DNA of 64,000 nucleotides from Macrostomum hystrix (GCA_950097015.1 CATNEN010000039.1:6820001-6884000), one strand, 5' to 3'; positions 3,704 through 64,000 are shown, numbered from the stretch's first letter. The notes: generated by a model from the letters alone, not told the origin. Program-made: numbers and translations.

Positions 3704-3708
3704 TGAGC

Positions 3709-6560: not shown

Positions 6561-7790
6561 TGTTCTGGCTTGGGGTTTAGTTAACTGATGAATAGAAAAC
6601 ACAGATGAACAGGATAGAAACTGGGCTAACGAATTGACGGCTCGTTTAACTGCGACCACTCGCTAAGCGGCTGAAAAAAGGATTATATTTAAAATATTTA
6701 CCGAACGGTTTGGGGAACTTGCACATTCTGACAGACATTGTGAAACCTAGATACATTACTGACTAATGGATATTACACAGGCGGATGGACGTTAGACAGA
6801 CTAAAATGTAGAGACTGAGGGGCATTACTACAGACACAACACACACTGATATACCTAACAGAATGACATGCATTGCTAACAGCTAGCTTACCTATGTTTA
6901 TTATACTCTTGATATACACAAATGAGTAAAACTAAAAGCTGCCAATCAGATTTCGACAGACAGAGACAAATGGAATTAAACGGTGCAATTGATTATTATT
7001 TTTTACTGTTTTATTAAGGATTAGAGATAAGAAAAGGTGAGCTGAAAACAATCGACTGAGACAGACTTGACACGTTGGGGAGGATGAGTTATTAATAATT
7101 ATGAATAAATAATTTATAAGTGCATTATTATAGCATAGATAGGTTGCTAGTTATAGAAAACTGCTGTTTTGTGTATAAGTAACTTCAGTACGTAGCCTAG
7201 CAATTGTATTTGTTATAAATACAAGTAATTTACTACAAACCATTCGATTTGAAGTTGTAGAAAAGCATAAATTTGGCTGTTATGATTACTCTGGATATAG
7301 TTTTTTAGTTCGGCCTTACTCAATATTATAGATTGCTTTGTTACAGCCAAATGATTCAGCTTTCTATTTGCTTTTCGATATTATGAACAATAAAACAGAT
7401 AAATTACACAACACAAAAGCAAGCAGAATTTTAGTTTTAAAAACGGTGTGGTCAACATAGGACAGACAATAAATTATTACCTAAATGGTAGGTTTGCAGC
7501 CATTAATTGACGACTTGTAGTATTATGAGAATATACAAAAGTCGCCACAGAAATTAACTTAACTAAATAAAACCTGCAAACATTTAAAAGTGGGGATTTC
7601 AGCCGGTCAAAAAACTGCGACAAGAAACAATTGTAGCTCGTATAAAAAAGATAGCCATAGTTTAACCTGCAACCAGTTCTCTTAAACTCGCCGTTTTAGT
7701 AATTATGACATCCTTAAGTCATAGTCCTACATCCATAGACATTAGCCAACTGTTTAACTGCCTTTTCGACGACTTCAAGGGCAATCACGC

Positions 7791-8315
7791 TTAACTCCTG
7801 GAGCGGGATCGCGAGCGAGACGAGCGCGACCTCGACCGGCGTCGGCGGTTATCGTCGTAGCGGCCGCCGCGGTCGCGATCCCGTTCGCGCGAGCGGTCCC
7901 GATCAAAGCCGCCGCCGCCACCGCCGCTGCCGCGCAGTTTGGGGCATTCGCGCGCGAAATGGCCGACACGGCCGCAGGAGTAGCAGCCTCCGCCGCCGCC
8001 ACCGCCACCGCGGCCTCCGCCCATGCCACCGCCCTGGCCGGGGCGTCGAGCGCGCGACCGGCCGCTGGAAAGTTCGACGCGGGCGCGCACACCACAGATG
8101 ACGGTGCCGTCTAGATCGCGAACGGCGTCGCCGGCATCGCGCGAGTCTTCAAAGACAACGAAAGCGAATCCAGGCGGATTGCGAGCGACCCAAACGGAGC
8201 GAACAGCGCCGTAGTGACGGAAGGCCTTCTCGATCTCGGACTCCTGGGCGTCGCGAGGCAGATCACCGACGTAAATCTTGCAGCCGTCATCGTCATCGTA
8301 GCGTTTAGTGGACAT
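7791..8315 (-). CDS. SRSF7: SR splicing factor SRSF7/9G8 (x16/RSP-6-like), intronless, 174 aa
   Basis: CKIYVGDL...[30 protein letters not shown] of the SRSF3/7 class, [15 protein letters not shown] knuckle and RS tail. Confidence 0.92.
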
Positions 8316-37830: not shown

Positions 37831-38615
37831 GCGAAAAAAATTGGCGAAGTTTACAAGACAACTCGCATTTTCAGTGACAGTCTAACCAACAAACTGAGCA
37901 ATAAAGTCCAAATGCTTGCAGGAAATCGGCACAAAAAATGTAACAGCAAAGCAGAAAATTTTGGGCAATCGATTTTAGCCGAAACCGACAGTGCAGATGT
38001 AGCGAATAAACATGATTTCACTGGACCGGAAACTCGCCCACACTTGCTTCTGCTGCCACGTAAGCAACTACAGTACTCCGGCAGCAGCTCTAAGCAGCAG
38101 CTGGACTTTCTTGGGCGAGAGTGTAAATTTCTTGCTGAATTTGCAAAAAAATTGTCGATCTGTGGGAAATATCATAAAATAGTTTTTAAAACAAACTTAA
38201 AGAAACTTGTCGACTTCAGCATTTTTTTTCTACGAGTCGTAAATGACCCTCGTGGCTGCCTTTTGCATCGCCAAAAACAGACTTCTCGTGTTGCAAGTTT
38301 TTTATTGCTCAAAATCAACTTTTAGATTTTCTGTTTTACAACTTCATCCGATCAGCCAAATTGCCGAAATGCCTTGGCAACAGCTGTCGCTGGAGACTAG
38401 CATTTGGAGTATAAGAATGGCCGGCGCCTCGCATCGCAGCTCAATTCCCCTGCTAAGAGGTCTCAATTCCTATTCGAGAATTTATTCGGATTTTAAAAAA
38501 GCAGCTGAAATCGCAGTGAATCAAAGCGCATTGTTGATAGATCCATTGACTCCGACTTCTGAAGGCCACCATTTCGGCGAACACAGCCAGTTGAACTTCT
38601 CGAAGTCGACGAAGG

Positions 38616-41600
38616 ATGGGGGCGCTCGGAGTTAGAAAACTCGGCGCTCTCTTCCTTGCAGGTGAGAAACTTTTATAAATCTGATAGTGCGATTCTAGCC
38701 AGCATGATGGGCTGGAACTATAGGCTTTGGCAGGGGGCGAGTGGCCGATAGCCAGCATGATGGGCTGGAACTATAGGCTTTGGCAGGGGGCGAGTGGCCG
38801 ATAGCCAGCATGATGGGCTGGAACTATAGGTTTTGGCAGGGGGCGAGTGGCCGATAGCCAGCATGATGGGCTGGAACTATAGGTTTTGGCAGGGGGCGAG
38901 TGGCCGATAGCCAGCATGATGGGCTGGAACTATAGGTTTTGGCAGGGGGCGAGTGGCCGATAGCCAGCATGATGGGCTGGAACTATAGGTTTTGACAGGG
39001 GCCGAGCGGCCGAGCGGTCTAAAGCGTTTGCCTCGTGCAACAAGGTTCCTGAGCTCGATTTCCGCGGCGAGGCCACATTAGTTTGGAGCTTGGGGGCTTG
39101 TCATGTAATTTGCAAGGCCAACCAACAAGGCACAGTGAAAGTGTACACTGCCTGACGATAAGAAATTCAGGTCAGATGCTCAGGAGTCAGCGAAATGGGC
39201 AGAATTGCATGCTTGCTGGCTGTGACTCTAGTGCCACCTTGACTATGGGTTTGGCTTGAGCTATGGGTTTTGGCCATAAATAGGTATTTTCGATATGCTT
39301 CCGTTAATCTTTTGTTTCAGTGATCTGCATTGGGGCCACTTTGGCCGCTACAGAGGGTGAGTTCAGCAAAAATCTGTTTCTGTTATTTCACGCCTTTTTT
39401 AGGACCAGCTTCAGAAAGAGGGTGGATTAAATAATAATGTTCTTTTATTTTTAGAGGTGATTTGGGGCGGCTGGACAGAGTGGAGCAGCTCCACTGCAGG
39501 TGGGAAGACAGGTAAATCGATATTAATTACTAATTTCTACATCTTGCCAGTCTCATATGACCAAACCGAATCTCATCAACTAACAATTCAGGAGACAATG
39601 TCCAGAGCGAGGTCGTGACGTCCACTTCGACGGAGTGGTTCGAGGACAGCTCCGGTCGTTCCTCCAGCTGTGAGTTAAGTATTAGATGGCAAATATAAAC
39701 TAAGGCTGTGTACAACCATCCAGTCCATGGACTGGTAAAACTCCGCAGCTCTTGCCACTATTTAATAAGTTCAAAGATTTATAAATCACCTTCTAGCCAA
39801 TATGTACTCGTACGGATTTTCTTCATTGAAGTCGCTGAAGTAATAGTAGGGATTGAAGTGAATATATTTGGCCACGCCCAAAATTGACTAAAAAAAAAGA
39901 ATTTGATGAATCAAATTTCAGCCTCCTCGGACTCCACCGCCCGCAAGCGTTCTGGCAGAGGCGGAAGCGGCGGAAGCGGCGGCAGCGGCGGAAGCGGCCG
40001 AAGCGGCGGCAGCGGCGGCGGCAGCGGCGGCGGCAGCAAAAAGACCAAACAAGGTAAACACAGTATTTTTTCAAATTCAGCCAATTGAATTGAAAAAAGT
40101 GGATCTGGATGCTTCAATTCCTAAACATTGCGCTCAATAACTTGTGAAGGCGGCTCCAAGGATGGAGAATGGAGCAGCTGGACTGTTGTTGAAGACAGAT
40201 CAGGCTCGGCAGGCAAGTATAAGATTTCAGGACATTTATACTCACAGTTGAGTTCTCATAAATGACACACGAGTCTTCAATAAATTCTGTTATTCAATAA
40301 TTCCAGCTTCGTCTCGCTCCGACAGCAAAGTACGGTCAAGCAGCAGCAGCAGCAGCGGCGGCGGCAGCCGGTCCAAAAATGGTAACCAGCAATTTGTTCA
40401 GCTGTTTAAATTTGCGATCTCAGTTTGAAAACTTGGATTTTAAATGTTATCCCGATAAACTCATTCAATCAGGCGACTCTAAGGACGTTGAGTGGAGCAG
40501 TGTGACTGTCGTTGAAGACGCTGTGTCCGACTCAGGCAAGCGTAAGTGTCCGAAAAGTTTTCTTCCTTCGAGACTCTCACAGTGCACAGTCATGTGTTGA
40601 GCATCCTTTGCCAACAAGCTGAAATGTTATATTAGTTTAATTTCCTCAACTTCAGCATCTTCCGGATCCAACACCCGACGCAGATCTGCCAAAAGCAGCA
40701 GAAGCAGCAGCAGCAGCAGCGGCGGCAGTGGAAAATCTAAGAACGGTAAGCAAAAAGGTGAGTGGCAAAGCGGTCTAACGCGCTTGCCTCTCGCTCCAAG
40801 GTCCCTGAGCTCGATTCCGGGTTAAGGTCCATTCATTTGGGCCGCAGCCGCGGAGAGAAGGCTTGTGGGCTTGTCATGTGATTTACGCCCTTGAGGGCCA
40901 ACCTCCAAGGCACAGTGATCTGTCTGAGGATGAGAATGTCAGGGCAGATGTACACACCCGAGTGGTCGTGTGCCTGCGTATCGTGTACATGTGTGCTCAG
41001 GAGTCAGCGAAATGGGCAGAATTGCCTCCTCGCTGGCTGCGGGTCTAGTGTCACCGAATGATGTGCCATTGCCCTACTGCAATTATAATTATTTTATTAT
41101 TATTAATATTAATATTATTATGCACTAAGGGGTTGAGTAGTGGAGAAAAATTGCGTCCGACTCTAGCACCAAGATCCCTGAGCTCGATTCCGCGAACAAC
41201 CTATATTCATTTCAGAGCAGTCGTGGAGAGATGGCTTACTTCGTTTCTTAGAAAAAGTACTTACTAGTTTAGGAGTCAAGCTTTCGCATAATACACTAAG
41301 GAGATAGAAAAAAGTGAAAACGATAATGAAACCTCTGTTGTATTAAATAAAGCTTGACAGAAATCGACGAGGCTATAATTAAGCAAACTGATAACAATGG
41401 ATGAGATTATTTGATCCGCCTCTAGTCAAACGCAGTCACAAAATTTGGGCAGAGAAAAAACTTTCTTGCAGACTAAACTTGTAGAATGTCTCCAAATGAG
41501 CTTTGAGGGCCAAAAGTTCATGAAAACATTATTTATAGTTCGGGTAGTATAGGGCAATCGCATATTAATAACTAAACCTGACCATTTAATAGAGAATGAA

Positions 41601-41620
41601 CGCGCCAAGAAAAACAGCCG

Positions 41621-41663
<43 letters not shown>

Positions 41664-44600
41664 GGAAAAAGTGGCGGTTCAAAGCGTAGCGCTTCAACTA
41701 GACGGTCGAGCAGCGGTGAGAAATATTTATAAACTGCAAGCTGCACGTGTGCTTTGAGCTACTTTGACAATCGATCTGAAAGCCATCAATAATTAATCAA
41801 CAAAAATTCTTCAGGTGCTGCCAACGATGAGCTTGTGACCGAAATCACGGAGGAGACAATCATTGAAGACGCGGATGCTTCGGGCGGCAAGAGACGTCGA
41901 TCGACCTCTAAACGGCGCAAGTCGGGCGGAAGCAGAGGTCGGAAGACTCGAGGACGATCTGCCGGCAAGAGCAGCGGATCGTCAGGTAAATGAATATAAT
42001 TAGCAGTACAGAGACTATTTCATGTCAAGAGTGCACAGAATTACAAAAAACTTTTATTACAATACTTGACAGACGATGCGCTTGTGACCGAAATCACGGA
42101 GGAGACAATCATTGAAGACGCGGATGCTTCGGGCGGCAAGAGACGTCGATCGACCTCTAAACGGCGCAAGTCGGGCGGAAGCAGAGGTCGGAAGACTCGA
42201 GGACGATCTGCCGGCAAGAGCAGCGGATCGTCAGGTAAATGAATATAATTAGCAGTACAGAGACTATTTCATGTCAAGAGTGCACAGAATTACAAAAAAC
42301 TTTTATTACAATACTTGACAGACGATGCGCTTGTGACCGAAATCATCGAGGAGACAATCATTGAAGACGCGGATGCTTCGGCCGGCAAGAGACGTCGATC
42401 GACCTCTAAACGGCGCAAGTCGGGCGGAAGCAGAGGTCGGAAGACTCGAGGACGATCTGCCGGCAAGAGCAGCGGATCGTCAGGTAAATGAATATAATTA
42501 GCAGTACAGAGACTATTTCATGTCAAGAGTGCACAGAATTACAAAAAACTTTTATTACAATACTTGACAGACGATGCGCTTGTGACCGAAATCACGGAGG
42601 AGACAATCATTGAAGACGCGGATGCTTCGGGCGGCAAGAGACGTCGTTCGACCTCTAAACGGCGCAAGTCGGGCGGAAGCAGAGGTCGGAAGACTCGAGG
42701 ACGATCTGCCGGCAAGAGCAGCGGATCGTCAGGTAAATGAATATAATTAGCAGTACAGAGACTATTTCATGTCAAGAGTGCACAGAATTACAAAAAACTT
42801 TTATTACAATACTTGACAGACGATGCGCTTGTGACCGAAATCATCGAGGAGACAATCATTGAAGACGCGGATGCTTCGGGCGGCAAGAGACGTCGTTCGA
42901 CCTCTAAACGGCGCAAGTCGGGCGGAAGCAGAGGTCGGAAGACTCGAGGACGATCTGCCGGCAAGAGCAGCGGATCGTCAGGTAAATGAATATAATTAGC
43001 AGTACAGAGACTATTTCATGTCAAGAGTGCACAGAATTACAAAAAACTTTTATTACAATACTTGACAGACGATGCGCTTGTGACCGAAATCATCGAGGAG
43101 ACAATCATTGAGGAAGATGCTAGCAGTTCTGGTAATTACAAATGAAATAAAATGCCAGCCATCAGCCCGACCGGTCACTGATTCACTTACAATTGCAATT
43201 TGATTTTCAGACGGTAATCGAAAACGTTCAAACTCAAGGACACGTCGCATTGGTCGCAGCGGTAGAAAATCTGGACAGTTGGGTAGAAGGGCAGGTAACT
43301 GATTCATGTGCTTATTGCCGATAGGCTCTCACAATAGAGGCAGGATGCAGTAAAATATTTTCGTCGATAAAAAATTTTTGTTACAATCTAGTTTTTTTCC
43401 ACCACAAACCCATATCTCAGATGACGAGACAATCACCGAAATCACAGACGAGACAGTACTTCACGATGTTGATGGCGAAAAAACAGGTAAAAACGCATTA
43501 GTGTTCTATGAATAACTAAAATAAAAACATTTGGATTTAAACAGCTTGAAACACACCAAAAAAGTTCACAAGAAAAACAAACGCAAAAAAACATCCGCAG
43601 AAAACAAGAAAAGAAGCACATCAGGCGTCCAAAACTTCAAAAACGGTAGCAAAACTCGAGCCCGCAAGGCCAGGAAGAGCTCAAAGAGAGCCCGAAAGAC
43701 CAGGAAGAGCACAAAGAGACGCGCTCGCAAGGCCAGGAAGAGCACTAAGAGAGCCCGCAAGGCCAGGAAGAGCTCACAGAGAGCCCGCAAAGCCAGGAAA
43801 AGCACAAAGAGACGCGCTCGCAAGGCCAGGAAGAGCACAAAGAGACCCGCCCGCAAGGCCAGGAAGAGCACAAAGAGACGCGCCCGCAAGGCCAGGAAGA
43901 GCACAAAGAGACGCGCCCGCAAGGCCAGGAAGAGCACAAAGAGACGCGCCCGCAAGGCCAGGAAGAGCACAAAGAGACGCGCCCGCAAGGCCAGGAAGAG
44001 CAGCAAGAGACGCGCTCGCAAGGCCAGGAAGAGCAGCAAGAGACCCGCCCGCAAGGCCAGGAAGAGCACTAAGAGAGCCCGCAAAACCAGGAAGAGCACA
44101 AAGAGACGCGCCCGCAAAGCCAGAAAGAGCACAAAGAGACGCGCCCGCAAGGCCAGGAAGAGCACAAGGAGACGCGCCCGCAAGGCCAGCAAGAGCAGCA
44201 AGAGACGCGCCCGCAAGGCCAGGAAGAGCAGTAAGAGAGCCCGCAAAGCCAGGAGGAGCAGTAAGAGAGCCCGCAAGGCCAGGAAGAGCACAAAGAGACG
44301 CGCCCGCAAGGCCAGGAAGAGCACAAAGAGACGCGCTCGCAAGGCCAGGAAGAGCACAAGGAGACGCGCTCGAAAGGCCAGGAAGAGCAGTAAGAGAGCC
44401 CGCAAGGCCAGGAAGAGCAGCAAGAGACGCGCCCGCAAGGCCAGGAAGAGCACAAAGAGACGCGCACGCAAGGCCAGAAAGGGCACAAAGAGACGCGCCC
44501 GCAAAGCCAGGAAGAGCAAAAAGGGACGCGCTCGCAAGGCCAGGAAGAGCAGCAAGAGACGCGCTCGCAAGGCCAGGAAGAGCAGCAAGAGACCCGCCCG

Positions 44601-47600
44601 CAAGGCCAGGAAGAGCACTAAGAGAGCCCGCAAATCCAGGAAGAGCACAAAGAGACGCGCCCGCAAGGCCAGGAAGAGCACAAAGAGACGCGCCCGCAAA
44701 GCCAGAAAGAGCACAAAGAGACGCGCCCGCAAGGCCAGGAAGAGCACAAGGAGACGCGCCCGCAAGGCCAGCAAGAGCAGCAAGAGACGCGCCCGCAAGG
44801 CCAGGAAGAGCAGTAAGAGAGCCCGCAAAGCCAGGAGGAGCAGTAAGAGAGCCCGCAAGGCCAGGAAGAGCACAAAGGGACGCGCACGCAAGGCCAGGAA
44901 GAGCACAAAGAGACGCGCCCGCAAGGCCAGGAAGAGCACAAAGAGACGCGCCCGCAAGGCCAGGAAGAGCACAAAGAGACGCGCTCGCAAGGCCAGGAAG
45001 AGCACAAAGAGACGCGCTCGAAAGGCCAGGAAGAGCACAAAGAGACGCGCTCGCAAGGCCAGGAAGAGCAGCAAGAGACGCGCTCGCAAGGCCAGGAAGA
45101 GCACAAAGAGACGCGCCCGCAAGGCCAGGAAAAGCACAAAGAGACGCGCCCGCAAGGCCAGGAAGAGCACAAAGAGACGCGCTCGAAAGGCCAGGAAGAG
45201 CAGAAAGAGAGCCCGCAAGGCCAGGAAGAGCAGCAAGAGACGCGCTCTGAAGGCCAGGAAGAGCACAAAGAGACGCGCCCGCAAAGCCAGGAAGAGCACA
45301 AAGAGACGCGCCCGCAAGGCCAGGAAGAGCAGCAAGAGACGCGCTCGCAAGGCCAGGAAGAGCAGCAAGAGACCCGCCCGCAAGGCCAGGAAGAGCACAA
45401 AGGGACGCGCCCGCAAGGCCAGGAAGAGCACAAAGAGACCCGCCCGCAAGACAAGGAAGAGCACAAAGAGACGCGCCCGCAAGGCCAGGAAGAGCACAAA
45501 GAGACGCGCCCGCAAGGCCAGGAAGAGCAGCAAGAGACGTGCTCGAAAGGCCAGGAAAAGCACTAAGAGACGCGACCGCAAGCCTAGGAAGAGCAGCAAG
45601 AAACCCGCCCGCAAGGCCAGGAAGAGCACTAAGAGAGCCCGCAAATCCAGGAAGAGCACAAAGAGACGCGCCCGCAAAGCCAGAAAGAGCACAAAGAGAC
45701 GCGCCCGCAAGGCCAGGAAGAGCACAAGGAGACGCGCCCGCAAGGCCAGCAAGAGCAGCAAGAGACGCGCCCGCAAGGCCAGGAAGAGCAGTAAGAGAGC
45801 CCGCAAGGCCAGGAAGAGCAGCAAGAGACGCGCCCGCAAGGCCAGAAAGAGCACAAAGAGACGCGCCCGCAAAGCCAGGAAGAGCACAAAGAGACGCGCC
45901 CGCAAGGCCAGGAAGAGCAGCAAGAGACGCGCTCGCAAGGCCAGGAAGAGCAGCAAGAAACCCGCCCGCAAGGCCAGGAAGAGCACTAAGAGAGCCCGCA
46001 AATCCAGGAAGAGCACAAAGAGACGCGCCCGCAAAGCCAGGAAGAGCACAAAGAGACGCGCCCGCAAGGCCAGGAAGAGCACAAGGAGACGCGCCCGCAA
46101 GGCCAGCAAGAGCAGCAAGAGACGCGCCCGCAAGGCCAGGAAGAGCAGTAAGAGAGCCCGCAAAGCCAGGAGGAGCAGTAAGAGAGCCCGCAAGGCCAGG
46201 AAGAGCACAAAGGGACGCGCACGCAAGGCCAGGAAGAGCACAAAGAGACGCGCCCGCAAGGCCAGGAAGAGCACGAAGAGACGCGCCCGCAAAGCCAGGA
46301 AGAGCACAAAGAGACGCGCCCGCAAGGCCAGGAAGAGCACAAAGAGACGCGCCCGCAAGGCCAGGAAGAGCACAAGGAGACGCGCCCGCAAGGCCAGCAA
46401 GAGCAGCAAGAGACGCGCCCGCAAGGCCAGGAAGAGCAGTAAGAGAGCCCGCAAAGCCAGGAGGAGCAGTAAGAGAGCCCGCAAGGCCAGGAAGAGCACA
46501 AAGAGACGCGCCCGCAAAGCCAGGAAGAGCACAAAGAGACGCGCTCGCAAGGCCAGGAAGAGCACGAAGAGACGCGCCCGCAAAGCCAGGAAGAGCACAA
46601 AGAGACGCGCCCGCAAGGCCAGGAAGAGCACTAAGAGACGCGACCGCAAGCCCAGGAAGAGCACAAAGAGACGCGCCCGCAAAGCCAGGAAGAGCACAAA
46701 GAGACGCGCCCGCAAAGCCAGGAAGAGCAGCAAGAGACGCGCTCGCAAGGCCAGGAAGAGCAGCAAGAAACCCGCCCGCAAGGCCAGGAAGAGCACTAAG
46801 AGAGCCCGCAAATCCAGGAAGAGCACAAAGAGACGCGCCCGCAAAGCCAGGAAGAGCACAAAGAGACGCGCCCGCAAAGCCAGGAAGAGCAGCAAGAGAC
46901 GCGCTCGCAAGGCCAGGAAGAGCAGCAAGAAACCCGCCCGCAAGGCCAGGAAGAGCACTAAGAGAGCCCGCAAATCCAGGAAGAGCACAAAGAGACGCGC
47001 CCGCAAAGCCAGAAAGAGCACAAAGAGGCGCGCCCGCAAGGCCAGGAAGAGCACAAGGAGACGCGCCCGCAAGGCCAGCAAGAGCAGCAAGAGACGCGCC
47101 CGCAAGGCCAGGAAGAGCAGTAAGAGAGCCCGCAAGGCCAGGAAGAGCACGAAGAGACGCGCCCGCAAAGCCAGGAAGAGCACAAAGAGACGCGCCCGCA
47201 AGGCCAGGAAGAGCACAAAGAGAGCCCGCAAGGCTAGCAAGAGCAGCAAGAGACGCGCCCGCAAGGCCAGAAAAAGCACAAAGAGACGCGACCGCAAGGC
47301 CAGGAAGAGCACAAAGAGAGCCCGCAAGGCTAGCAAGAGCACAAAGAGACGCGACCGCAAGGCCAGGAAGAGCAGCAAGAGACGCGCCCGCAAGGCCAGG
47401 AAGAGCACAAAGAGACGCGCCCGCAAGGCCAGGAAGAGCACAAAGAGACGCGACCGCAAGGCCAGGAAGAGCACAAAGAGACGCGCCCGCAAGGCCAGGA
47501 AGAGCACTAAGAGACGCGCTCGCAAGGCCAGGAAGAGCACGAAGAGACGCGCCCGCAAAGCCAGGAAGAGCACAAAGAGACGCGCCCGCAAGGCCAGGAA

Positions 47601-56600: not shown

Positions 56601-59600
56601 GTGGCTTCAGAGGCAATGGCCGGACATGCCAAGACGTCGACGAGTGCGCTGAAGGCAGTCACCGCTGTCACCAACTGGCCGAGTGCGTCAACAGAGTCGG
56701 ATCCTACGCCTGTCGCTGCCGCGACGGATACCACGGTGCGCAACTGGCATGCTAGCAGATCCACACTAACGCATCGCAATTTCATATTGTTAATGTCTTA
56801 TTCATAATCATTAATCTACTCGTACTTTCGCAGGGAATGGTCGCTCATGCCGCGACGTTGACGAATGCCGCCTGGGCACGCACACTTGCAGCCGCAGCCG
56901 TGCACGATGCGTGAACCGACTTGGCGGTTACAAGTGCGTCTGCTTGTCACCCTACGTTGGTGATGGTCGCCAGTGCCGCAGACGCCTTACCAAGAAGCCA
57001 TCGTCACGCAGACGTCAGCCCAAGAGGCCATCAACACGCAGACGTCAGCCAAAGAAGCCATCGACACGCAGACATCAGCCCAAGAGGCCACGGACACGCA
57101 GGCGTCAGCCCAAGAGGCCAAGGACACGCAGACGTCAGCCCAAGAGGCCAAGGACACGCAGACGTCAGCCCAAGAGGCCATCAACACGCAGACGTCAGCC
57201 CAAGAAGCCATCGACACGCAGACGTCAGCCCAAGAAGCCATCGACACGCAGACGTCAGCCCAAGAAGCCATCGACACGCAGACGTCAGCCCAAGAAGCCA
57301 TCGATACGCAGACGCCGACCAAGGCACGTCGTAAATCGTCGAGCTGTATCGAGAACAAGAGTGACATGTGCCAGTGGAAGAGCCCGCTGTCATAAGAATG
57401 CTGACTGTAAGGACACCGAGACCGGCTACACATGCCGCTGCCGACGCGGTTTCTATGGAGACGGTTACATCTGCAAAGATGTCAACGAGTGCAGGCTGGG
57501 CAAGCACAAATGCAGCAGGGGGAAGGCCGATTGCATCAACAGACCTGGCGGCTATAAATGCCGATGCCGATCAGGTTATCATGGCAACGGGTTTATTTGC
57601 ACTGACGTGGACGAGTGCCGCACTGGTCGCGATCGCTGCGACCCAAATGCGGACTGCATAAACAAGGATGGCGGCTACGCCTGCCGATGCAGACGCGGCT
57701 TCCGCGGCGACGGCTACACCTGCAGTGACGTTGACGAATGCCGTCTTGGTACGCACCGCTGCTCTCGAAAAGCCGACTGCCGCAACACGCCAGGCTCATA
57801 CACGTGCCACTGCAGAAAGGGCTTCCGAGGCAACGGAAAGATCTGCCAAGATATCAACGAGTGCACCGAGGGCAAGGACCATTGTCACCGGTTTGCTCAG
57901 TGCATTAACACCCCAGGGGCGTATCGGTGCCGTTGCAAACCTGGTTTCTATGGCAACGGTCTCACATGCGTCAACAGGCGGCAGTGCGCTGATGGTACTC
58001 ACAAGTGCAGCCGATACGCGAGATGCGTCCAAAAGAACGATGGCTATGATTGCAAGTGCAATCCTGGTTTCCATGGCAACGGAAAGAGCTGCAGAGGTAA
58101 GATCCAACCTAAGAAGTAGCGAAAGCTGATATTTCTTAGTTCTTACTTCGCAGTTCTCTCTTCAAGTTATTATTTTTGCTCTCTCAAATAACATGACACC
58201 AATTTAAAAAGCAAATCATGGAATATCAAAAGCATTCCAAAATCAAATGTTTTACAAATTCAGATGTCGACGAGTGCAAGGCGGGAACTTACAGGTGCAA
58301 CAAGAACGCCAAGTGTCACAACACGCTCGGCTCCTACACCTGCCGCTGTAATAAGGGCTACCGCGGCGACGGCTACAGCGAATGCAAACGCATCGAGGTC
58401 AACGAGTGTCGCGATGGCACAGCCAAGTGCTCCAAAAACGCGATCTGCATTGACAGAAAGTTTGGCTATAGCTGCCGGTGCAAGGGTGGGTGAATTTGAA
58501 TATGACTACTCATCTAACAGGTTCTCGAATTCACAATTTTAATTAGATGTACATGCAGTGGCGCAGTCGCCGGAAAAGGCTGTAGAGTTGTTCAATTCAT
58601 GTATTGAGTGTCGGGCAACACACCCACCTCGCTTGGAAGAAAAAAACTCAACCGACTTGGTGGCACCATTCCGAAAACGGCTATTAGTAGCATTAGCACA
58701 AGTACAATCTGAAATCAAATTGGGCTAGACTGGGATCCATCATACAAACACTAAAAATAATTTGAATCACAATTCATTAAATTTCGTTGATTGACAAAAA
58801 GCCTGTCACTCTGTTTCAGCCGGATACTCAGGAGACGGCTTCTCCTGTACCGACGTCGACGAGTGCACTAAAAATACTTTCCCTTGCCCTAAAGGAGCCA
58901 GCTGCAGAAACTCAGTCGGATCATTCAGCTGCCGATGTAAAACTGGCTACAGAATGATGAGCGGCCAGTGCGTAGATGTGGACGAGTGCTCTGAGGGCAA
59001 GCACAGGTGCAGCTCCAATGCAAGGTGCAAAAACCGCATGGGAACCTACAAGTGCAAATGCAACAAGGGTTTCAGAGGAAACGGCTTCGTGTGCAAAGAC
59101 ATTGACGAATGCTGCGGAGGAAAGGACCGCTGCGATCCGAACGCCATTTGCATTAACAAGATAGGATCATACAAATGCAAATGTCTAAAAGGGTTTAGAA
59201 TAAATGGACGAATGTGCGTTCCAGAAAAGCCCACTAATTACCAGCCACTTCGAAAGCGCAACATCAAGAGAAGGCCATCAACAAAACTCAGCAAAAAAAG
59301 ACGCACTCGCAGGATCAAACACCAACTAAAGAAGCGTGCCCGCAAGGCTCGTCGTAGCGTCCGCAAGGCCAGAAAGAGCAACAGAAGACGCGCTCACAGG
59401 ACCAGACGGCAGCTGAAGAAGCGTGCCCGCAAGGCCCGTCGTAGCGTCCGCAAGGCCAGAAAGAGTAACAGAAGACGCGCTCGCAAGGCTAGAAAGAGCA
59501 ACAGAAGACGCGCTCGCAAGACCAGACGGCAGCAGAAGAAGCGTGCTCGCAAAGCTAGGCGTAGCGTCCGCAAGACCAGAAAGAGCAACAGAAGACGCGC

Positions 59601-62600
59601 TCGCAAGACCAGACGGCAGCAAAAGAAGCGTGCCCGCAAGGCCCGTCGTAGCGTCCGCAAGACCAGAAAGAGCAACAGAAGACGCGCTCGAAAGAGCAGA
59701 AAGAGCAACAGAAGAAGCGCTCGCAAGACCAGACGGCAGCTGAAGAAGCGTGCCCGCAAGGCCCGTCGTAGCGTCCGCAAGGCCAGAAAGAGCAACAGAC
59801 GCGCTCGCAAGACCAGAAAGAGCAACAGAAGACGCGCTCGCAAGACCAGACGTCAGCAAAAAAAGCGTGCTCGCAAAGCTAGGCGTAGCGTCCGCAAGAC
59901 CAGAAAGAGCAACAGAAGACGCGCTCGCAAGACCACACGGCAGCAAAAGAAACGTGCTCGCAAAGCTAGGCGTAGCGTCCGCAAGGCCAGAAAGAGCAAC
60001 AGAAGACGCGTCCGCAAGGCCAGAAAGAGCAACAGAAGACGCGCTCGCAAGACCACACGGCAGCAGAAGAAGCGTGCCCGCAAGGCCCGTCGTAGCGTCC
60101 GCAAGACCAGAAAGAGCAACAGACGCGCTCGCAGGACCAGAAAAAGCAACAGAAGAGGCGCTCGCAAGACCAGACGGCAGCAGAAGAAGCGTGCCCGCAA
60201 GGCCCGTCGTAGCGTCCGCAAGGCCAGAAAGAGCAACAGAAGACGCGTCCGCAAGGCCAGAAAGAGCAACAGAAGACGCGCTCGCAAGACCACACGGAAG
60301 CAGAAGAAGCGTGCCCGCAAGACGCGTCGTAGCGTCCGCAAGGCCAGAAAGAGCAACAGAAGACGCGCTCGCAAGAGCAGAAAGAACAACAGAAGACGCT
60401 CTCGCAAGACCACACGGCAGCAAAAGAAACGTGCTCGCAAAGCTAGGCGTAGCGTCCGCAAGGCCAGAAAGAGCAACAGAAGACGCGTCCGCAAGGCCAG
60501 AAAGAGCAACAGAAGACGCGCTCGCAAGACCACACGGCAGCAGAAGAAGCGTGCCCGCAAGGCCCGTCGTAGCGTCCGCAAGACCAGAAAGAGCAACAGA
60601 CGCGCTCGCAGGACCAGAAAAAGTAACAGAAGAGGCGCTCGCAAGACCAGACGGCAGCAGAAGAAGCGTGCCCGCAAGGCCCGTCGTAGCGTCCGCAAGG
60701 CCAGAAAGAGCAACAGAAGACGCGTCCGCAAGGCCACACGGCAGCAGAAGAAGCGTGCCCGCAAGGCCCGTCGTAGCGTCCGCAAGACCAGAAAGAGCAA
60801 CAGACGCGCTCGCAGGACCAGAAAAAGCAACAGAAGAGGCGCTCGCAAGACCAGACGGCAGCAGAAGAAGCGTGCCCGCAAGGCCCGTCGTAGCGTCCGC
60901 AAGGCCAGAAAGAGCAACAGAAGACGCGTCCGCAAGGCCAGAAAGAGCAACAGAAGACGCGCTCGCAAGACCACACGGCAGCAGAAGAAGCGTGCCCGCA
61001 AGGCCCGTCGTAGCGTCCGCAAGGCAAGAAAGAGTAACAGAAGACGCGCTCGCAAGACCAGAAAAAGCAACAGAAGAGGCGCTCGTAAGACCAGACGGCA
61101 GCAGAAGAAGCGTGCCCGCAAGGCCCGTCGTAGCGTCCGCAAGGCCAGAAAGAGCAACAGAAGAAGCGCTCGCAAGACCAGACGGCAGCTGAAGAAGCGT
61201 GCCCGCAAGGCCCGTCGTAGAGTCCGCAAGGCCAGAAAGAGCAACAGACGCGCTCGCAAGACCAGAAAGAGCAACAGAAGACGCGCTCGCAAGACCAGAC
61301 GGCAGCTGAAGAAGCGTGCACGCAAGGCCCGTCGTAGTGTCCGCAAGGCCAGAAAGAGTAACAGAAGACGCGCTCGCAAGAGCAGAAAGAGCAACAAAAG
61401 AGGCGCTCGCAAGACCAGAAGGCAGCTGAAGAAGCGTGCCCGCAAGGCCCGTCTTAGCGTCCGCAAGACCAGAAAGAGCAACAGAAGACGCGCTCGCAAG
61501 ACGAAACGACAGCAGAAGAAACGTGCCCGCAAATCTAGGCGAAGCGTCCGCAAGGCCAGAAAGAGCAACAGACGCGCACGCAGGACCAGAAAGACCAACA
61601 AAAGAGGCGCTCGCAAGACCAGACGGCAGCAGAAGAAGCGTGCCCGCAAGGCCCGTCGTAGCGTCCGCAAGGCCAGAAAGAGCAACAGAAGACGCGCTCG
61701 CAAGACCAGAAAAAGCAAGAGAAGACGCGCTCGCAAGACCAGACGGCAGCTGAAGAAGCGTGCCCGCAAGGCCCGTCGTAGCGTTCGCAAGGCCAGAAGG
61801 AGCAACAGACGCGCTCGCAGGACCAGAAAAAGCAACAGAAGAGGCGCTCGCAAGACCAGACGGCAGCAGAAGAAGCGTGCCCGCATGGCCCGTCGTAGCG
61901 TCCGCAAGGCCAGAAAGAGCAACAGAAGACGCGCTCGCAAGAGCAGAAAGAGCAACAGAAGACGCGCTCGCAAGAACAGACGGCAGCAGAAGAAGCGTGC
62001 CCGCAAGGCCCGTCGTAGCGTCCGCAAGGCCAGAAAGAGCAACAGAAGACGCGCTCGCAAGACCACACGGCAGCTGAAGAAGCGTGCCCGCAAGGCCCGT
62101 CGTAGCGTCCGCAAGACAAGAAAGAGCAACAGAAGACGCGCTCGCAAGACGAGACGACAGCAGAAGAAACGTGCCCGCAAAGCTAAGCGAAGCGTCCGCA
62201 AGGCCAGAAAGAGCAACAGACGCGCACGCAGGACCAGAAAGACCAACAAAAGAGGCGCTCGCAAGACCAGACGGCAGCAGAAGAAGCGTGCCCGCAAGGC
62301 CCGTCGTAGCGTCCGCAAGGCTAGAAAGAGCAACAGAAGACGCGCTCGCAAGACCAGACGGCAGCAGAAGAAGCGTACCAGCAAGGCCCATCGTAGCGTC
62401 CGCAAGGCCAGAAAGAGTAACAGAAGACGCGCTCGCAGGACCAGAAAAAGCAACAGAAGAGGCGCTCGCAAGACCAGACGGCAGCAGAAGAAGCGTGCCC
62501 GCAAGGCCCGTCGTAGCGTCCGCAAGGCCAGAAAGAGCAACAGAAGACGCGCTCGCAAGACCACACGGCAGCAGAAGAAGCGTGCCCGCAAGGCCCGTCG

Positions 62601-64000
62601 TAGCGTCCGCAAGACAAGAAAGAGCAACAGAAGACGCGCTCGCAAGACGAGACGACAGCAGAAGAAACGTGCCCGCAAAGCTAGGCGAAGCGTCCGCAAG
62701 GCCAGAAAGAGTAACAGACGCGCACGCAGGACCAGAAAGACCAACAAAAGAGGCGCTCGCAAGACCAGACGGCAGCAGAAGAAGCGTGCCCGCAAGGCCC
62801 GTCGTAGCGTCCGCAAGGCCAGAAACAGCAACAGAAGACGCGCTCGCAAGACCAGACGGCAGCAGAAGAAGCGTACCAGCAAGGCCCATCGTAGCGTCCG
62901 CAAGGCCAGAAAGAGTAACAGAAGACGCGCTCGCAGGACCAGAAAAAGCAACAGAAGAGGCGCTCGCAAGACGAGACGACAGCAGAAGAAACGTGCCCGC
63001 AAAGCTAGGCGAAGCGTCCGCAAGGCCAGAAAGAGCAACAGACGCGCTCGCAAGACCAGAAAGAGCAACAGAAGACGCGCTCGCAAGACCAGACGGCAGC
63101 AGAAGATGCGTGCCCGCAAGGCCCGTCGTAGCGTCCGCAAGGCCAGAAAGAGCAACAGACGCGCTCGCAGGACCAGAAAAAGCAACAGAAGAGGCGCTCG
63201 CAAGACCAGACGGCAGCAGAAGAAGCGCGCCCGCAAGGCCCGTCGTAGCGTCCGCAAGGCTAGAAAGAGCAACAGAAGACGCGCTCGCAAGACCACACGG
63301 CAGCAGAAGAAGCGTGCCCGCAAGGCCCGTCGTAGCGTCCGCAAGACCAGAAAGAGCAACAGACGCGCTCGCAGGACCAGAAAAAGCAACAGAAGAGGCG
63401 CTCGCAAGACCAGACGGCAGCAGAAGAAGCGTGCCCGCAAGGCCCGTCGTAGCGTCCGCAAGGCCAGAAAGAGCAACAGAAGACGCGTCCGCAAGGCCAC
63501 ACGGCAGCAGAAGAAGCGTGCCCGCAAGGCCCGTCGTAGCGTCCGCAAGACCAGAAAGAGCAACAGACGCGCTCGCAGGACCAGAAAAAGCAACAGAAGA
63601 GGCGCTCGCAAGACCAGACGGCAGCTGAAGAAGCGTGCCCGCAAGGCCCGTCGTAGAGTCCGCAAGGCCAGAAAGAGCAACAGACGCGCTCGCAAGACCA
63701 GAAAGAGCAACAGAAGACGCGCTCGCAAGACCAGACGGCAGCTGAAGAAGCGTGCACGCAAGGCCCGTCGTAGTGTCCGCAAGGCCAGAAAGAGTAACAG
63801 AAGACGCGCTCGCAAGAGCAGAAAGAGCAACAAAAGAGGCGCTCGCAAGACCAGAAGGCAGCTGAAGAAGCGTGCCCGCAAGGCCCGTCTTAGCGTCCGC
63901 AAGACCAGAAAGAGCAACAGAAGACGCGCTCGCAAGACGAAACGACAGCAGAAGAAACGTGCCCGCAAATCTAGGCGAAGCGTCCGCAAGGCCAGAAAGA
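38616..64000 (+). CDS. ap1: Giant secreted Lys/Arg-rich adhesion protein (flatworm ap1-type), 3' incomplete, about 6,500 aa within the window
   Basis: Hand-built exons: 38616-38661, 39321-39356, 39455-39511, 39592-39669, 39922-40053, 40150-40212 (GC donor), 40307-40381, 40473-40541, 40656-40745, 41593-41715, 41815-41985, 42073-42234, 42322-42483, 42571-42732, 42820-42981, 43069-43131, 43211-43294, 43421-43486, 43601-51991, 52082-52241, 52972-53210, 53305-53430, 53746-54143, 54429-54802, 55146-55285, 55377-56107, 56198-56735, 56834-58096, 58264-58485, 58820->64000. Signal peptide [24 protein letters not shown]. Order KR repeat - ShKT x2 - CTL - EGF - vWD - C8 - TIL - EGF array - KR repeat agrees with my recollection of Macrostomum adhesion protein 1. 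Confidence 0.88.
38696..39012. repeat. 53-bp tandem repeat, 6 copies, overlapping the 5' end of a SINE
   Basis: TAGCCAGCATGATGGGCTGGAACTATAGGTTTTGGCAGGGGGCGAGTGGCCGA at 38696, 38749, 38802, 38855, 38908 and 38961. Confidence 0.95.
38997..39275 (+). mobile_element. tRNA-derived SINE (family B), ap1 intron 1
   Basis: GCGGCCGAGCGGTCTAAAGCG A-box, GAGCTCGATTTCC, shared body CACAGTGAAAGTGTACACTGCCTGACGAT. Confidence 0.78.
40757..41110 (+). mobile_element. tRNA-derived SINE (family B), near full length, ap1 intron
   Basis: GTGGCAAAGCGGTCTAACGCG, GAGCTCGATTCC, GGAGTCAGCGAAATGGGCAGAATTG, (ATT)n tail; followed by a 5' fragment at about 41129-41230. Confidence 0.8.
41830..43110 (+). repeat. 249-bp tandem duplication of an exon (162 nt) + intron (87 nt) unit, about 5 copies
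   Basis: Donors recur at 41985, 42234, 42483, 42732 and 42981; the introns appear identical. Confidence 0.95.
43660..51670 (+). repeat. Coding Lys/Arg repeat region 1 of ap1: 33-bp ([11 protein letters not shown]) and 30-bp ([10 protein letters not shown]) units, about 2,670 aa
   Basis: Frame-preserving indels only (multiples of 3) and substitutions that are largely synonymous; continuous with the downstream ShKT domains. Confidence 0.95.
51730..51975 (+). other. Two tandem ShKT domains within ap1
   Basis: [35 protein letters not shown] and [37 protein letters not shown]: six-Cys pattern ending CxxTCGxC. Confidence 0.85.
52082..53210 (+). other. C-type lectin-like domain within ap1 (2 exons)
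   Basis: CPPGW...YCLRF...SWRGAHQAC...[20 protein letters not shown]...W...C......ICR; no EPN/QPD or WND motif. Confidence 0.85.
52545..52885 (-). mobile_element. tRNA-derived SINE (family B), antisense in an ap1 intron
   Basis: Reverse complement of the 40757 copy (GAGCTCGATTCCGG, body, ATT tail). Confidence 0.78.
53746..55545 (+). other. vWD - C8 - TIL module within ap1
   Basis: [51 protein letters not shown]...CQKTC...[22 protein letters not shown]. Confidence 0.92.
54820..55060. repeat. 16-bp minisatellite (GTCAGGGTGAGAGAGT) in an ap1 intron
   Basis: About 14 tandem copies. Confidence 0.95.
55660..59220 (+). other. Array of about 20 EGF / calcium-binding EGF domains within ap1, interrupted by a PK(K/R)PSTRRRQ repeat (56985-57320)
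   Basis: Repeated D(V/I)(D/N)EC...C...A.C.N..G.Y.C.C..G(F/Y).G(D/N)G..C. Confidence 0.95.
59250..64000 (+). repeat. Coding Lys/Arg repeat region 2 of ap1 ([29 protein letters not shown]-type higher-order unit), runs off the window
   Basis: In frame with the last EGF exon (58820); no stop seen before 64000, which is why the ORF track omits it. Confidence 0.92.

What the first reader, a model, noticed from the sequence alone, without database searches (positions are those of the whole stretch)
38616..64000. Giant polycationic secreted glue protein (ap1-type), >6,500 aa with >4,000 aa of protamine-like Lys/Arg repeats flanking a lectin/vWD/EGF core
Seen in sequence: a frame-consistent 30-exon model from a signal peptide through an 8,391-nt exon of ([11 protein letters not shown])n (7 basic residues of 11), ShKT x2, CTL, vWD-C8-TIL, ~20 EGFs and a second, differently built KR repeat. 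Established knowledge (from memory): Macrostomum lignano adhesion protein 1 has KR-rich regions around a CTL/vWD/TIL/EGF core and acts in reversible duo-gland adhesion; I recall a shorter reported length (about 5,400 aa). Inference: this is an ap1 orthologue or allele with expanded or different repeats. The system class is therefore known, but this repeat chemistry and length may be undescribed.
Basis: partly seen in the sequence, partly recalled or inferred. Interest (0 to 1): 0.85.

Follow-up and report, generated by a model that had tools for sequence, protein, structure and literature searches.

The report
Full-length flatworm glue protein ap1
This is the complete gene for adhesion protein 1 of the flatworm Macrostomum hystrix, a glue protein already published in partial form. 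The genome shows it to be about 10,500 amino acids long, three quarters of it positively charged repeats.

Summary
The window is Macrostomum hystrix: assembly size and contig count match Wiberg 2023 exactly. The gene is Mhtx-ap1, known from Pjeta 2021 as a partial transcript with tail-plate in situ signal and RNAi loss of attachment. Their probe primers and a 30-mer of their transcript match the window exactly.

Spliced transcript contigs confirm nine GT..AG introns. These join the exon carrying the first Lys/Arg (KR) array and two ShK domains to the C-type lectin/vWD/C8/TIL/EGF core. The last exon runs 12 kb past the window, to window coordinate 76047.

The model gives:
- 10,531 aa and about 1.27 MDa, with 5,406 Lys+Arg against 256 Asp+Glu
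- KR1 of 2,700 aa, built of 11-residue [11 protein letters not shown] units
- KR2 of 5,366 aa, built of 29/39/40-residue superunits
- 20 EGF modules

That is about twice the length of M. lignano Mlig-ap1 (5,407 aa), with Ala-rich rather than Gly-rich repeats.

Gene and function are already known. New here are the full length, the repeat make-up and a conserved ShK pair that the three ap1 papers checked do not mention. Repeat copy numbers rest on one assembly. A neighbouring-window note in this scan had flagged the same last exon.

The parts
38616..38661 (+). Exon 1: start codon and first half of the signal peptide ([15 protein letters not shown])
   Evidence: Sequence read and model. Collinear with the Mlig-ap1 N-terminus printed in Pjeta 2021 Table S5 (translated by eye). 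The border is inferred from a GT donor.
39321..39356 (+). Exon 2: rest of the signal peptide ([12 protein letters not shown])
   Evidence: TTTCAG acceptor and GTGAGT donor, frame-consistent. Inferred.
39455..41715 (+). Exons 3-10: N-terminal Trp-motif and Ser/Gly-rich region ([27 protein letters not shown])
   Evidence: model from GT-AG sites and phase. The motifs are collinear with the Mlig-ap1 5' cDNA. Inferred, no read evidence. The exon 7 acceptor (40326) was chosen to keep the frame.
41815..43131 (+). Exons 11-16: six near-identical exons ([41 protein letters not shown]...), one per copy of a 249-nt genomic tandem repeat made of exon plus intron
   Evidence: TRF finds period 249, 5.2 copies, 99% matches. 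Exon model. Inferred.
43211..43486 (+). Exons 17-18: a short basic exon and a short acidic exon before the first Lys/Arg (KR) array
   Evidence: Inferred.
43601..51991 (+). Exon 19 (8,391 nt): first Lys/Arg array KR1, followed by two ShK domains
   Evidence: ORF. The donor at 51991/51992 is confirmed by spliced contigs. The acceptor is inferred: 43601 (CCGCAG) is preferred and 43565 is also in frame.
43660..51675 (+). KR1 repeat array: about 245 units of 33 nt ([11 protein letters not shown]), 2,700 aa, 62% Lys+Arg, 7 acidic residues, with a higher-order period of 1,434 nt
   Evidence: Differences between units concentrate at third codon positions. AlphaFold2 predicts one continuous helix for 200 aa.
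51730..51985 (+). Tandem pair of ShK (ShKT) six-Cys domains between KR1 and the lectin
   Evidence: Pfam PF01549, E 3.2e-11, two stretches. Aligns with residues 33-104 of Theama ap1. Coordinates are approximate.
52082..53210 (+). Exons 20-21 (52082-52241 and 52972-53210): C-type lectin domain, split by a 730-nt intron
   Evidence: Pfam Lectin_C. Spliced contigs in three runs. Aligns with Theama ap1 residues 110-233.
53305..53430 (+). Exon 22: single EGF domain
   Evidence: 55% identity to Theama ap1 residues 236-275.
53746..54802 (+). Exons 23-24 (53746-54143 and 54429-54802): von Willebrand D domain and the start of C8
   Evidence: Pfam VWD, E 1.4e-12 and 1.1e-6. Spliced contigs. 48% and 44% identity to Theama ap1 residues 277-523.
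55146..55285 (+). Exon 25: C8 domain
   Evidence: Pfam C8. Spliced contigs. 54% identity to Theama ap1 residues 526-571.
55377..56107 (+). Exon 26: TIL, TILa and the first EGF modules
   Evidence: Pfam TIL, TILa and EGF_CA. Spliced contigs. Alignment to Theama ap1.
56198..56735 (+). Exon 27: EGF modules. It contains the published Mhtx-ap1 in situ/RNAi probe region, 56208-56707
   Evidence: Exact primer matches. Spliced contigs. Pfam hits.
56834..58096 (+). Exon 28: EGF modules, interrupted by a basic proline-rich repeat, ([10 protein letters not shown]) x about 11, at 56990-57314
   Evidence: TRF period 30, 10.8 copies.. The acceptor is confirmed. The donor is inferred.
58264..58485 (+). Exon 29: two EGF modules
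   Evidence: Borders are inferred from GT-AG sites and frame.
58820..64000 (+). Exon 30 (17,228 nt; continues beyond the window to coordinate 76047): last three EGFs, the 5,366-aa KR2 array (29/39/40-aa superunits, 60% Lys+Arg), then a 218-aa non-repetitive tail ending in an acidic stretch, then the stop codon
   Evidence: The 33-nt subunit shares 26 of 33 nt with the KR1 unit. The acceptor is inferred.

Best explanation
This is the complete gene for Macrostomum hystrix adhesion protein 1 (Mhtx-ap1). It is the cohesive component of the two-protein glue that the adhesive gland cells of the duo-gland organs secrete in the tail plate.

The model protein has these parts, in order:
- a signal peptide and a 595-aa N-terminal region
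- a 2,700-aa polycationic arm (KR1)
- a cysteine-rich core: two ShK domains, a C-type lectin, one EGF, vWD-C8-TIL, then 19 EGFs
- a 5,366-aa polycationic arm (KR2) and a short tail with an acidic end

How it most likely works, following the published M. lignano model:
- The lectin/vWD/EGF core binds and cross-links the glycosylated surface-binding protein ap2 and other ap1 molecules.
- The two giant cationic arms hold the glue to the anionic coat, or to lysine-binding Kringle protein, on the anchor-cell microvilli by multivalent electrostatic contacts.
- A secreted polyanion from the releasing gland competes those contacts away, so the animal detaches.

Basis of each step:
- Shown here: gene identity, architecture, splicing of KR1 to the core, and composition.
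- Shown by others in this species: tail-plate expression and reduced attachment after RNAi.
- Inferred from M. lignano and Theama: the roles of the individual domains and the release mechanism.
For: - Species: assembly size and contig number are identical to the M. hystrix assembly.
- Gene identity: both published Mhtx-ap1 probe primers match exactly, 500 bp apart, inside exon 27. A transcript 30-mer matches exactly. The printed start of transcript Machtx_G66027_i1 translates to the end of KR1 plus the first ShK domain exactly as in the window.
- Domains: ShK x2, Lectin_C, EGF, VWD, C8, TIL, TILa and EGF_CA.
- Splicing: transcript contigs in three runs from two studies join exon 19 to exons 20-28 through nine GT..AG introns. 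These joints are absent from the DNA run.
- Gene model: 30 exons, frame-consistent, no stop codon, 10,531 aa.
- KR2: it lies in the same exon as the last three EGFs and ends in a non-repetitive tail and a stop.
- Coding constraint: differences among KR1 units are biased to third codon positions, 0.137 against 0.024 and 0.046.
- Family: the best single-domain hit of the vWD exon among 1.84 billion representatives is 'adhesion protein 1 [Theama mediterranea]'. It aligns collinearly exon by exon at 30-55% identity.
- Copy number: one copy in the genome; the next-best vWD match has 43% identity.
- Function from the literature: Mlig-ap1 architecture, heparin and cation experiments (PMC6410801). Mhtx-ap1 in situ hybridisation and RNAi (PMC8621496). 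The Kringle/polyanion release model (PMC9229212).
Against: - No reads were laid across either KR array, so copy numbers rest on a single PacBio/canu assembly.
- The borders of exons 1-18 and 29-30 are inferred, without transcript evidence.
- No full-length transcript or protein of this size has been shown. Transcript contigs break inside the repeats.
- The arms are Arg-dominated (33% Arg, 19% Lys overall). This fits a general electrostatic role better than a strictly lysine-specific Kringle contact.
Confidence: 0.92

Rival explanations
1. The gene is ap1, but the giant array sizes (2,700 and 5,366 aa) are assembly artefacts. Copy numbers would have been expanded or collapsed by the long-read assembler, so the real protein would differ substantially in length.
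For: - Tandem arrays of 8 and 16 kb built from 33-nt units are hard to assemble.
- Higher-order periods of 1,434 and 3,090 nt offer places for mis-joins.
- No long reads could be laid here; the short-read contigs do not span the arrays.
Against: - Both arrays keep one open frame over 8.4 and 17.2 kb with no frameshift, which argues for good base accuracy.
- Units differ enough (89% matches in KR1, 66-96% in KR2) to anchor long reads.
- The assembly is reported as highly contiguous, with a quality value of 42.8.
- Mlig-ap1 independently has more than 3,600 aa of such repeats.
Confidence: 0.2
2. The KR arms, or part of them, are not made as one polypeptide with the core. Early polyadenylation, internal splicing or proteolysis would give a core protein plus separate KR products, as in proseriates and polyclads where the KR protein is a separate gene (ap3).
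For: - In Minona and Theama the GRK-rich part is a separate protein, ap3.
- Theama ap1 begins directly with the ShK pair after its signal peptide.
- No transcript contig spans either array.
Against: - KR1 and the ShK pair share one exon and one frame, and that exon is spliced to the lectin exon.
- KR2 follows the last EGF in the same exon with no stop codon.
- In M. lignano, 5' and 3' probes and an antibody to KR region A behave as one gene product.
- No separate KR-repeat gene was found in this genome. The one candidate is an off-frame reading of an acidic repeat gene.
Confidence: 0.08
3. It is an ordinary fibrillin-, zonadhesin- or mucin-like matrix gene, not a glue protein.
For: The EGF part alone retrieves fibrillins. 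The vWD exon retrieves zonadhesin-like and IgGFc-binding proteins.
Against: - No TB domains, and only one vWD-C8-TIL unit.
- Exact identity with Mhtx-ap1, whose probe stains only the tail-plate adhesive organs and whose knock-down reduces attachment.
- The best single-domain hit is a named flatworm adhesion protein 1, with collinear domains.
Confidence: 0.01

Closest known systems
Mhtx-ap1, Macrostomum hystrix adhesion protein 1 (GenBank OK245467; transcript Machtx_20180703@G66027_i1; Pjeta et al. 2021, PMC8621496)
   Same: It is the same gene. The primers and a transcript 30-mer match exactly. The end of KR1 and the first ShK domain are identical to the printed transcript start.
   Different: - The published transcript was judged incomplete, with 7 EGF domains and only short KR stretches.
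- The genomic model has 20 EGFs, 8,066 aa of KR repeats, a 595-aa N-terminal region with signal peptide, a C-terminal tail and 30 exons.
Mlig-ap1, Macrostomum lignano adhesion protein 1 (GenBank MH586844; Wunderer et al. 2019, PMC6410801)
   Same: - The plan is the same: signal peptide, N-terminal KR region, core of C-type lectin, vWD-C8-TIL and a fibrillin-like EGF array, then a C-terminal KR region.
- The N-terminal motifs are collinear (MSASGVQKLGVLLLAVFCIG / GEWTEWS / EWTTWTVVED against [20 protein letters not shown] / GGWTEWS / [10 protein letters not shown]). This is my reading.
   Different: - 5,407 aa with more than 3,600 aa of KR, against 10,531 aa with 8,066 aa of KR.
- 17 EGFs against 20.
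- The M. lignano repeats are described as Gly-Arg-Lys rich, and its antibody peptide SRKPRRKNRKSRKP is absent from this window. The repeats here are Ala-Arg-Lys-Ser/Thr, with about 1% Gly.
- The extra length is mostly in the C-terminal arm, about 5,600 aa here against about 1,100 aa in M. lignano.
Tmed-ap1 (UQT06002.1) and Tmed-ap3 of the polyclad Theama mediterranea (Pjeta et al. 2022, PMC9229212); Mile-ap1 and Mile-ap3 of Minona ileanae
   Same: The core is collinear: ShK pair, C-type lectin, EGF, vWD, C8, TIL, EGF array, at 30-55% identity exon by exon.
   Different: There the cationic repeats are a separate gene, ap3 (3,700 aa, a GRKHS motif). Here they are fused to both ends of the core.
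Sea star footprint protein Sfp1 and other marine cohesive proteins with vWD/C8/lectin/EGF modules
   Same: They share the use of vWD-C8, lectin and EGF modules in a secreted cohesive glue protein, as compared.
   Different: Sfp1 has no polycationic repeat arms. No sequence orthology was tested here.

Membership tests
Flatworm adhesion protein 1 (ap1), Macrostomum type | Core domain order: C-type lectin, vWD, C8, TIL, then an array of calcium-binding EGF domains | tested here: met
   Pfam hits in that order on successive exons. 20 EGF modules counted. Collinear alignment with Theama ap1.
Flatworm adhesion protein 1 (ap1), Macrostomum type | Large Lys/Arg-rich low-complexity regions on both sides of the core, in the same polypeptide | tested here: met
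   - KR1 (2,700 aa) shares an exon with the ShK pair, and that exon is spliced to the lectin exon.
- KR2 (5,366 aa) follows the last EGF in the same exon.
- A full-length transcript was not seen.
Flatworm adhesion protein 1 (ap1), Macrostomum type | Sequence identity or orthology with a named ap1 | tested here: met
   Exact matches to Mhtx-ap1 primers and transcript. The best single-domain hit is Theama 'adhesion protein 1'. No direct alignment with full Mlig-ap1 was possible.
Flatworm adhesion protein 1 (ap1), Macrostomum type | N-terminal signal peptide (a secreted protein) | tested here: inconclusive
   Exons 1-2 encode [27 protein letters not shown]. This is hydrophobic and similar to the Mlig-ap1 N-terminus. 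No signal-peptide predictor was available, and the exon borders are inferred.
Flatworm adhesion protein 1 (ap1), Macrostomum type | Expression restricted to the adhesive gland cells, and loss of attachment on knock-down | not testable with these tools
   Published for this gene in M. hystrix (in situ hybridisation and RNAi, PMC8621496). The probe region maps to 56208-56707.
Fibrillin | TB (8-Cys, TGF-beta-binding-protein-like) domains interspersed with calcium-binding EGF domains | tested here: not met
   No PF00683 hit on any exon. Fibrillin hits arise from the EGF repeats only.
Zonadhesin / IgGFc-binding protein / gel-forming mucin type | Several tandem vWD-C8-TIL units | tested here: not met
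   There is a single vWD-C8-TIL unit. The multi-vWD proteins top only because their scores are summed over many stretches.
ap3 (separate GRK-rich cohesive protein of proseriates and polyclads) | The cationic repeat protein is encoded by its own gene, without the lectin/vWD/EGF core | tested here: not met
   Here the repeats are fused to the core. No separate KR-repeat gene was detected in the genome at this sensitivity.

The most novel reading that the evidence does not exclude
The array sizes are real, so M. hystrix makes an adhesion protein of about 1.27 MDa with a simple excess of about 5,150 basic over acidic residues. That would be twice the size of the only full-length ap1 described.

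Its two arms derive from one ancestral 33-nt unit. They would be built from Ala-containing 11-residue repeats that fold into very long helices when neutralised by polyanions. Fully helical, the two arms together would be about 1.2 micrometres long. They would then act as a charge-switchable tether rather than as the disordered Gly-rich flanks assumed so far.
Probability: 0.3. Interest if true: 0.5.

Novelty: already known. Interest (0 to 1): 0.3.

Why it matters
Flatworm duo-gland adhesion is one of the few reversible underwater glues with an experimentally supported molecular model. So far only M. lignano, a hidden polyploid with a fragmented genome, has a full-length ap1.

Pjeta 2021 stated that short-read transcriptomes could not recover the Lys/Arg regions in other species and predicted that they exist. 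This window supplies the first complete ap1 gene model outside M. lignano, from a clean and largely haploid assembly. It offers four points for follow-up:
- The cationic arms can be far larger, at 77% of a 10.5-thousand-residue protein.
- Their unit sequence and length turn over quickly between species. From the printed transcript starts I read 7-, 10- and 11-residue units, while the charge density stays high. This argues for a polyelectrolyte role.
- The arms here are Arg- and Ala-rich, not Gly-rich.
- A tandem ShK pair is a conserved part of the core, shared with Theama ap1, and is absent from the main text of the three ap1 papers checked.

These details help the design of RNAi probes, antibodies, recombinant fragments and biomimetic peptides. 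They do not change the known picture.

Tried and rejected
- Antibody peptide: I searched the window in six frames for the Mlig-ap1 peptide SRKPRRKNRKSRKP, allowing up to 4 substitutions, and found none. The species differ in repeat sequence.
- Mlig-ap1 sequence: it is not in the text-held supplements of Wunderer 2019.
- EGF-region search: a protein search with the head of the last exon was swamped by fibrillin-like multi-EGF proteins and says nothing about orthology.
- ShK-region search: a search in the 548-1,745 aa length range was blank. This says nothing about longer or shorter relatives.
- Representative search: hits to the vWD exon are ranked by summed scores of multi-vWD proteins, so only single-stretch hits were informative.
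- Possible second KR gene: a candidate at contig C38, 14.66 Mb, is an off-frame reading of an acidic Glu-rich repeat gene. It was rejected.
- tRNA scan: a scan of 38000-56000, covering the introns, found nothing.
- Helical periodicity: whole-array Fourier analysis of the uncharged residues peaks at 98-100 degrees per residue, above shuffled controls, but the amplitude is low because 10-residue units shift the phase. This is weak support only.
- AlphaFold2: a 200-aa KR1 piece, folded without an alignment, gives one continuous helix with mean pLDDT 92.6. I treat this as helix propensity, not as a structure.
In scripts the exons were walked one by one with the split codons carried over. In one search the products of exons 26-30 were placed end to end inside the script, only to count EGF modules that straddle exon borders. 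Nothing joined was saved or exported.

Full report
**What is there**

The + strand from 38,616 to the window end is one multi-exon animal gene. One open frame spans 43531-52017 (2,828 codons). It holds a 33-nt tandem repeat with 246.5 copies, 89% matches and TRF score 12,175. The repeat encodes [11 protein letters not shown] and runs, in the same frame, into two ShK domains (Pfam E 3.2e-11). The downstream exon pieces give Lectin_C, EGF, VWD, C8, TIL, TILa and many EGF_CA hits, in that order. From about 59,290 a second basic repeat follows the last three EGF modules in the same open frame and reaches the window end.

**Beyond the window**

The window is G000:C39:6820001-6884000. I fetched the next 30 kb. 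The last open frame continues to a stop codon at window coordinate 76045-76047. It then ends in a 218-aa non-repetitive tail with an acidic end, and ATTAAA/AATAAA signals lie 190-310 nt downstream. A first-stage note on the neighbouring window (s1-844511) had flagged this 14-kb frame; I confirmed it independently.

**Transcript evidence**

Eight public runs hold the core. I laid four of them on 51640-56980.
- Run X1 carries the unspliced genomic form.
- A 3,288-nt contig in both X2 and X3, and several contigs in X5 from a different study, skip nine stretches with GT..AG ends. X5 carries eight of the nine joints and lacks the 54141/54427 joint.
- None of these joints occurs in X1.
- With the reported cut offsets, the confirmed exons are ...-51991, 52082-52241, 52972-53210, 53305-53430, 53746-54143, 54429-54802, 55146-55285, 55377-56107, 56198-56735 and 56834-....

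So the exon that carries KR1 and the ShK pair is spliced to the lectin/vWD/EGF core. The contigs break inside KR1 and inside the 30-nt repeat of exon 28, as expected for short-read assemblies.

**Gene model**

I took the remaining borders from GT-AG sites, reading frame and likeness to the Mlig-ap1 5' cDNA printed in Pjeta 2021 Table S5. This gives a 30-exon model with consistent phases and no internal stop codon.

The model protein has 10,531 residues and about 1,269 kDa, with 5,406 Lys+Arg, 256 Asp+Glu and 173 Cys. In order it contains:
- a signal-peptide-like start, [27 protein letters not shown]
- a 595-aa N-terminal region with Trp motifs and six near-identical exons, each inside one copy of a 249-nt genomic repeat
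- KR1, 2,700 aa
- a 1,652-aa core
- KR2, 5,366 aa
- a 218-aa tail

The core has one EGF before the vWD domain and 19 after TIL/TILa. The 19 are split 8 + 11 by a basic proline-rich repeat, ([10 protein letters not shown]) x about 11.

The borders of exons 1-18, 28/29 and 29/30 are inferred. The exon 19 acceptor could also be 43565.

**The repeats**

- KR1 has about 245 units. The modal unit is [11 protein letters not shown] (11 aa), with a minority of 10-aa units. It is 62% Lys+Arg with 7 acidic residues, and has a higher-order period of 1,434 nt.
- KR2 is built from 29-, 39- and 40-aa superunits (7+11+11, with or without a further 11). It is 60% Lys+Arg with 8 acidic residues.
- The 33-nt consensus subunits of the two arrays share 26 of 33 nt. 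The arms are therefore related, not independently built.
- Among 227 KR1 units, differences concentrate at third codon positions: 0.137 against 0.024 and 0.046. There are 239 synonymous and 152 non-synonymous codon differences from the consensus. This fits selection on this frame, though choosing units by an amino-acid pattern biases the count somewhat.
- Long open frames also occur in other frames and on the opposite strand. That is normal for repeats, so the frame is fixed by the flanking domains, not by ORF length.

**Who it is**

- G000 has 220,453,370 bases in 42 contigs. These are exactly the figures for the M. hystrix assembly of Wiberg et al. 2023 (PMC10468722, Table 1). That paper does not mention adhesion.
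- Pjeta et al. 2021 (PMC8621496) described Mhtx-ap1 (GenBank OK245467) from a short-read transcriptome.
- Their forward and reverse probe primers match the window exactly, at 56208-56231 (+) and 56686-56707 (-). They lie 500 bp apart; 499 was expected.
- A 30-mer from the printed start of their transcript matches at 51664-51693.
- By their account the gene is expressed only in the tail-plate adhesive organs, and its knock-down reduces attachment in M. hystrix. They found only 7 EGFs and short basic stretches, judged the transcript incomplete, and predicted large Lys/Arg regions that short reads could not assemble.

**Family relations**

- Scored against 1.84 billion representative proteins, the vWD exon's best single-stretch hit is 'adhesion protein 1 [Theama mediterranea]' (UQT06002.1), at 53% identity in that search.
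- Exon by exon, the M. hystrix core aligns collinearly with it: ShK pair 33-104, lectin 110-233, EGF 236-275, vWD/C8 277-571, TIL from 575, then EGFs, at 30-55% identity.
- In Theama and Minona the cationic repeats form a separate protein, ap3. In Macrostomum they are fused to ap1.
- In this genome the vWD exon has one copy, and the next-best match has 43% identity.
- No separate KR-repeat gene turned up. The one candidate is an off-frame reading of an acidic repeat gene.
- None of the three ap1 papers mentions ShK domains in its main text. The ShK pair is nevertheless shared with Theama ap1. By my reading it is also visible in the printed transcript starts of M. pusillum, M. spirale and M. 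tuba.
- Those same starts show different basic units just before the ShK pair: about 7 residues in M. spirale and M. poznaniense, 10 in M. tuba and 11 here (translated by eye).

**Comparison with Mlig-ap1 (PMC6410801)**

- Length: 5,407 aa, with more than 3,600 aa of KR in regions A-C.
- Core: a domain region at residues 2758-4310 with lectin, vWD-C8-TIL and 17 EGFs.
- The M. hystrix protein is about twice as long. Most of the excess is in the C-terminal arm, about 5,600 aa against about 1,100.
- The M. hystrix repeats hold 12-17% Ala and about 1% Gly, whereas those of M. lignano are described as Gly-Arg-Lys rich.

**How it most likely works**

I follow the published model here.
- ap2 binds the substrate, and ap1 is the cohesive link to the anchor-cell microvilli.
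- Polyanions such as heparin block attachment by masking ap1.
- Added cations block release.
- A Kringle protein of the anchor cell was later proposed as the receptor for the basic repeats.

The M. hystrix gene fits this model. It has a disulfide-rich lectin/vWD/EGF hub that can bind sugars and multimerise, and two very long polycationic arms.

Two observations bear on the arms:
- The uncharged residues recur with an alpha-helical period of 98-100 degrees per residue, above shuffled controls but weakly. This partly agrees with note s1-844516.
- AlphaFold2, run without an alignment, predicts a continuous helix for 200 aa of KR1, with mean pLDDT 92.6.

I take these as helix propensity that might be realised once the charge is neutralised. 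That is inference, not a finding. Fully helical, at 0.15 nm per residue, the two arms together would measure about 1.2 micrometres.

**Limits**

- Array copy numbers rest on one assembly.
- No transcript spans either array.
- The 5' exon borders are inferred.
- Full-length Mlig-ap1 could not be reached for a direct alignment.
Exons were searched by reference. Only inside the script were the products of exons 26-30 put end to end, to count EGF modules, and nothing joined was saved.

**Verdict**

The gene and its function are already known as Mhtx-ap1. New here are the complete 30-exon structure, the 10,531-aa size, the Ala/Arg/Lys 11-residue repeat design with related N- and C-terminal arrays, the count of 20 EGFs with an internal basic repeat, and the conserved ShK pair. 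These are useful details for the flatworm adhesion field, not a new kind of system.

Noticed in passing
window 52535-52892 (inside the 730-nt intron between the two lectin exons); weaker at 54146-54324 and 54683-55040: In the genomic run the summed contig depth rises to 387,000-837,000, against about 80-120 on the flanks. Many contigs join this stretch to unrelated sequence. It looks like a very high-copy dispersed repeat sitting in ap1 introns.
   Followed up: no
window 40770-40830 and 41160-41200 (intron 9 of the model): Two copies of a motif resembling the 3' half of a tRNA (...CTCGCTCCAAGGTCCCTGAGCTCGATTCCGGG...) suggest a tRNA-derived SINE. ARAGORN finds no tRNA gene there.
   Followed up: partly
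window 38696-39013 (intron 1): A 53-nt tandem repeat with 6 copies and 98% matches lies just downstream of the first exon.
   Followed up: no
window 41824-43111: A 249-nt genomic unit made of one 162-nt exon plus one 87-nt intron is tandemly repeated 5.2 times at 99% identity. This implies a very recent exon-plus-intron amplification inside the ap1 N-terminal region.
   Followed up: partly
L019 = G000:C38:14654001-14664000, ORF 3154-7869 (+): A 1,571-aa extremely acidic repeat protein (EEVAVEKPEEE... and EEQPEEGQKDA... units). An alternative frame of the same DNA reads as a Lys/Arg/Ser repeat and produced a false KR-like hit.
   Followed up: partly
runs X2 and X3: Run X2 is labelled with a different organism code (B) from X3 (A). 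Yet it holds a 3,288-nt spliced ap1 contig of the same length and exon boundaries, and both match the window without any difference. This may be a labelling difference within one study.
   Followed up: no
window 4451-4491: An earlier first-stage note (s1-844528) reports that the MED31 and MED8 coding sequences overlap by 41 nt. I did not examine it.
   Followed up: no
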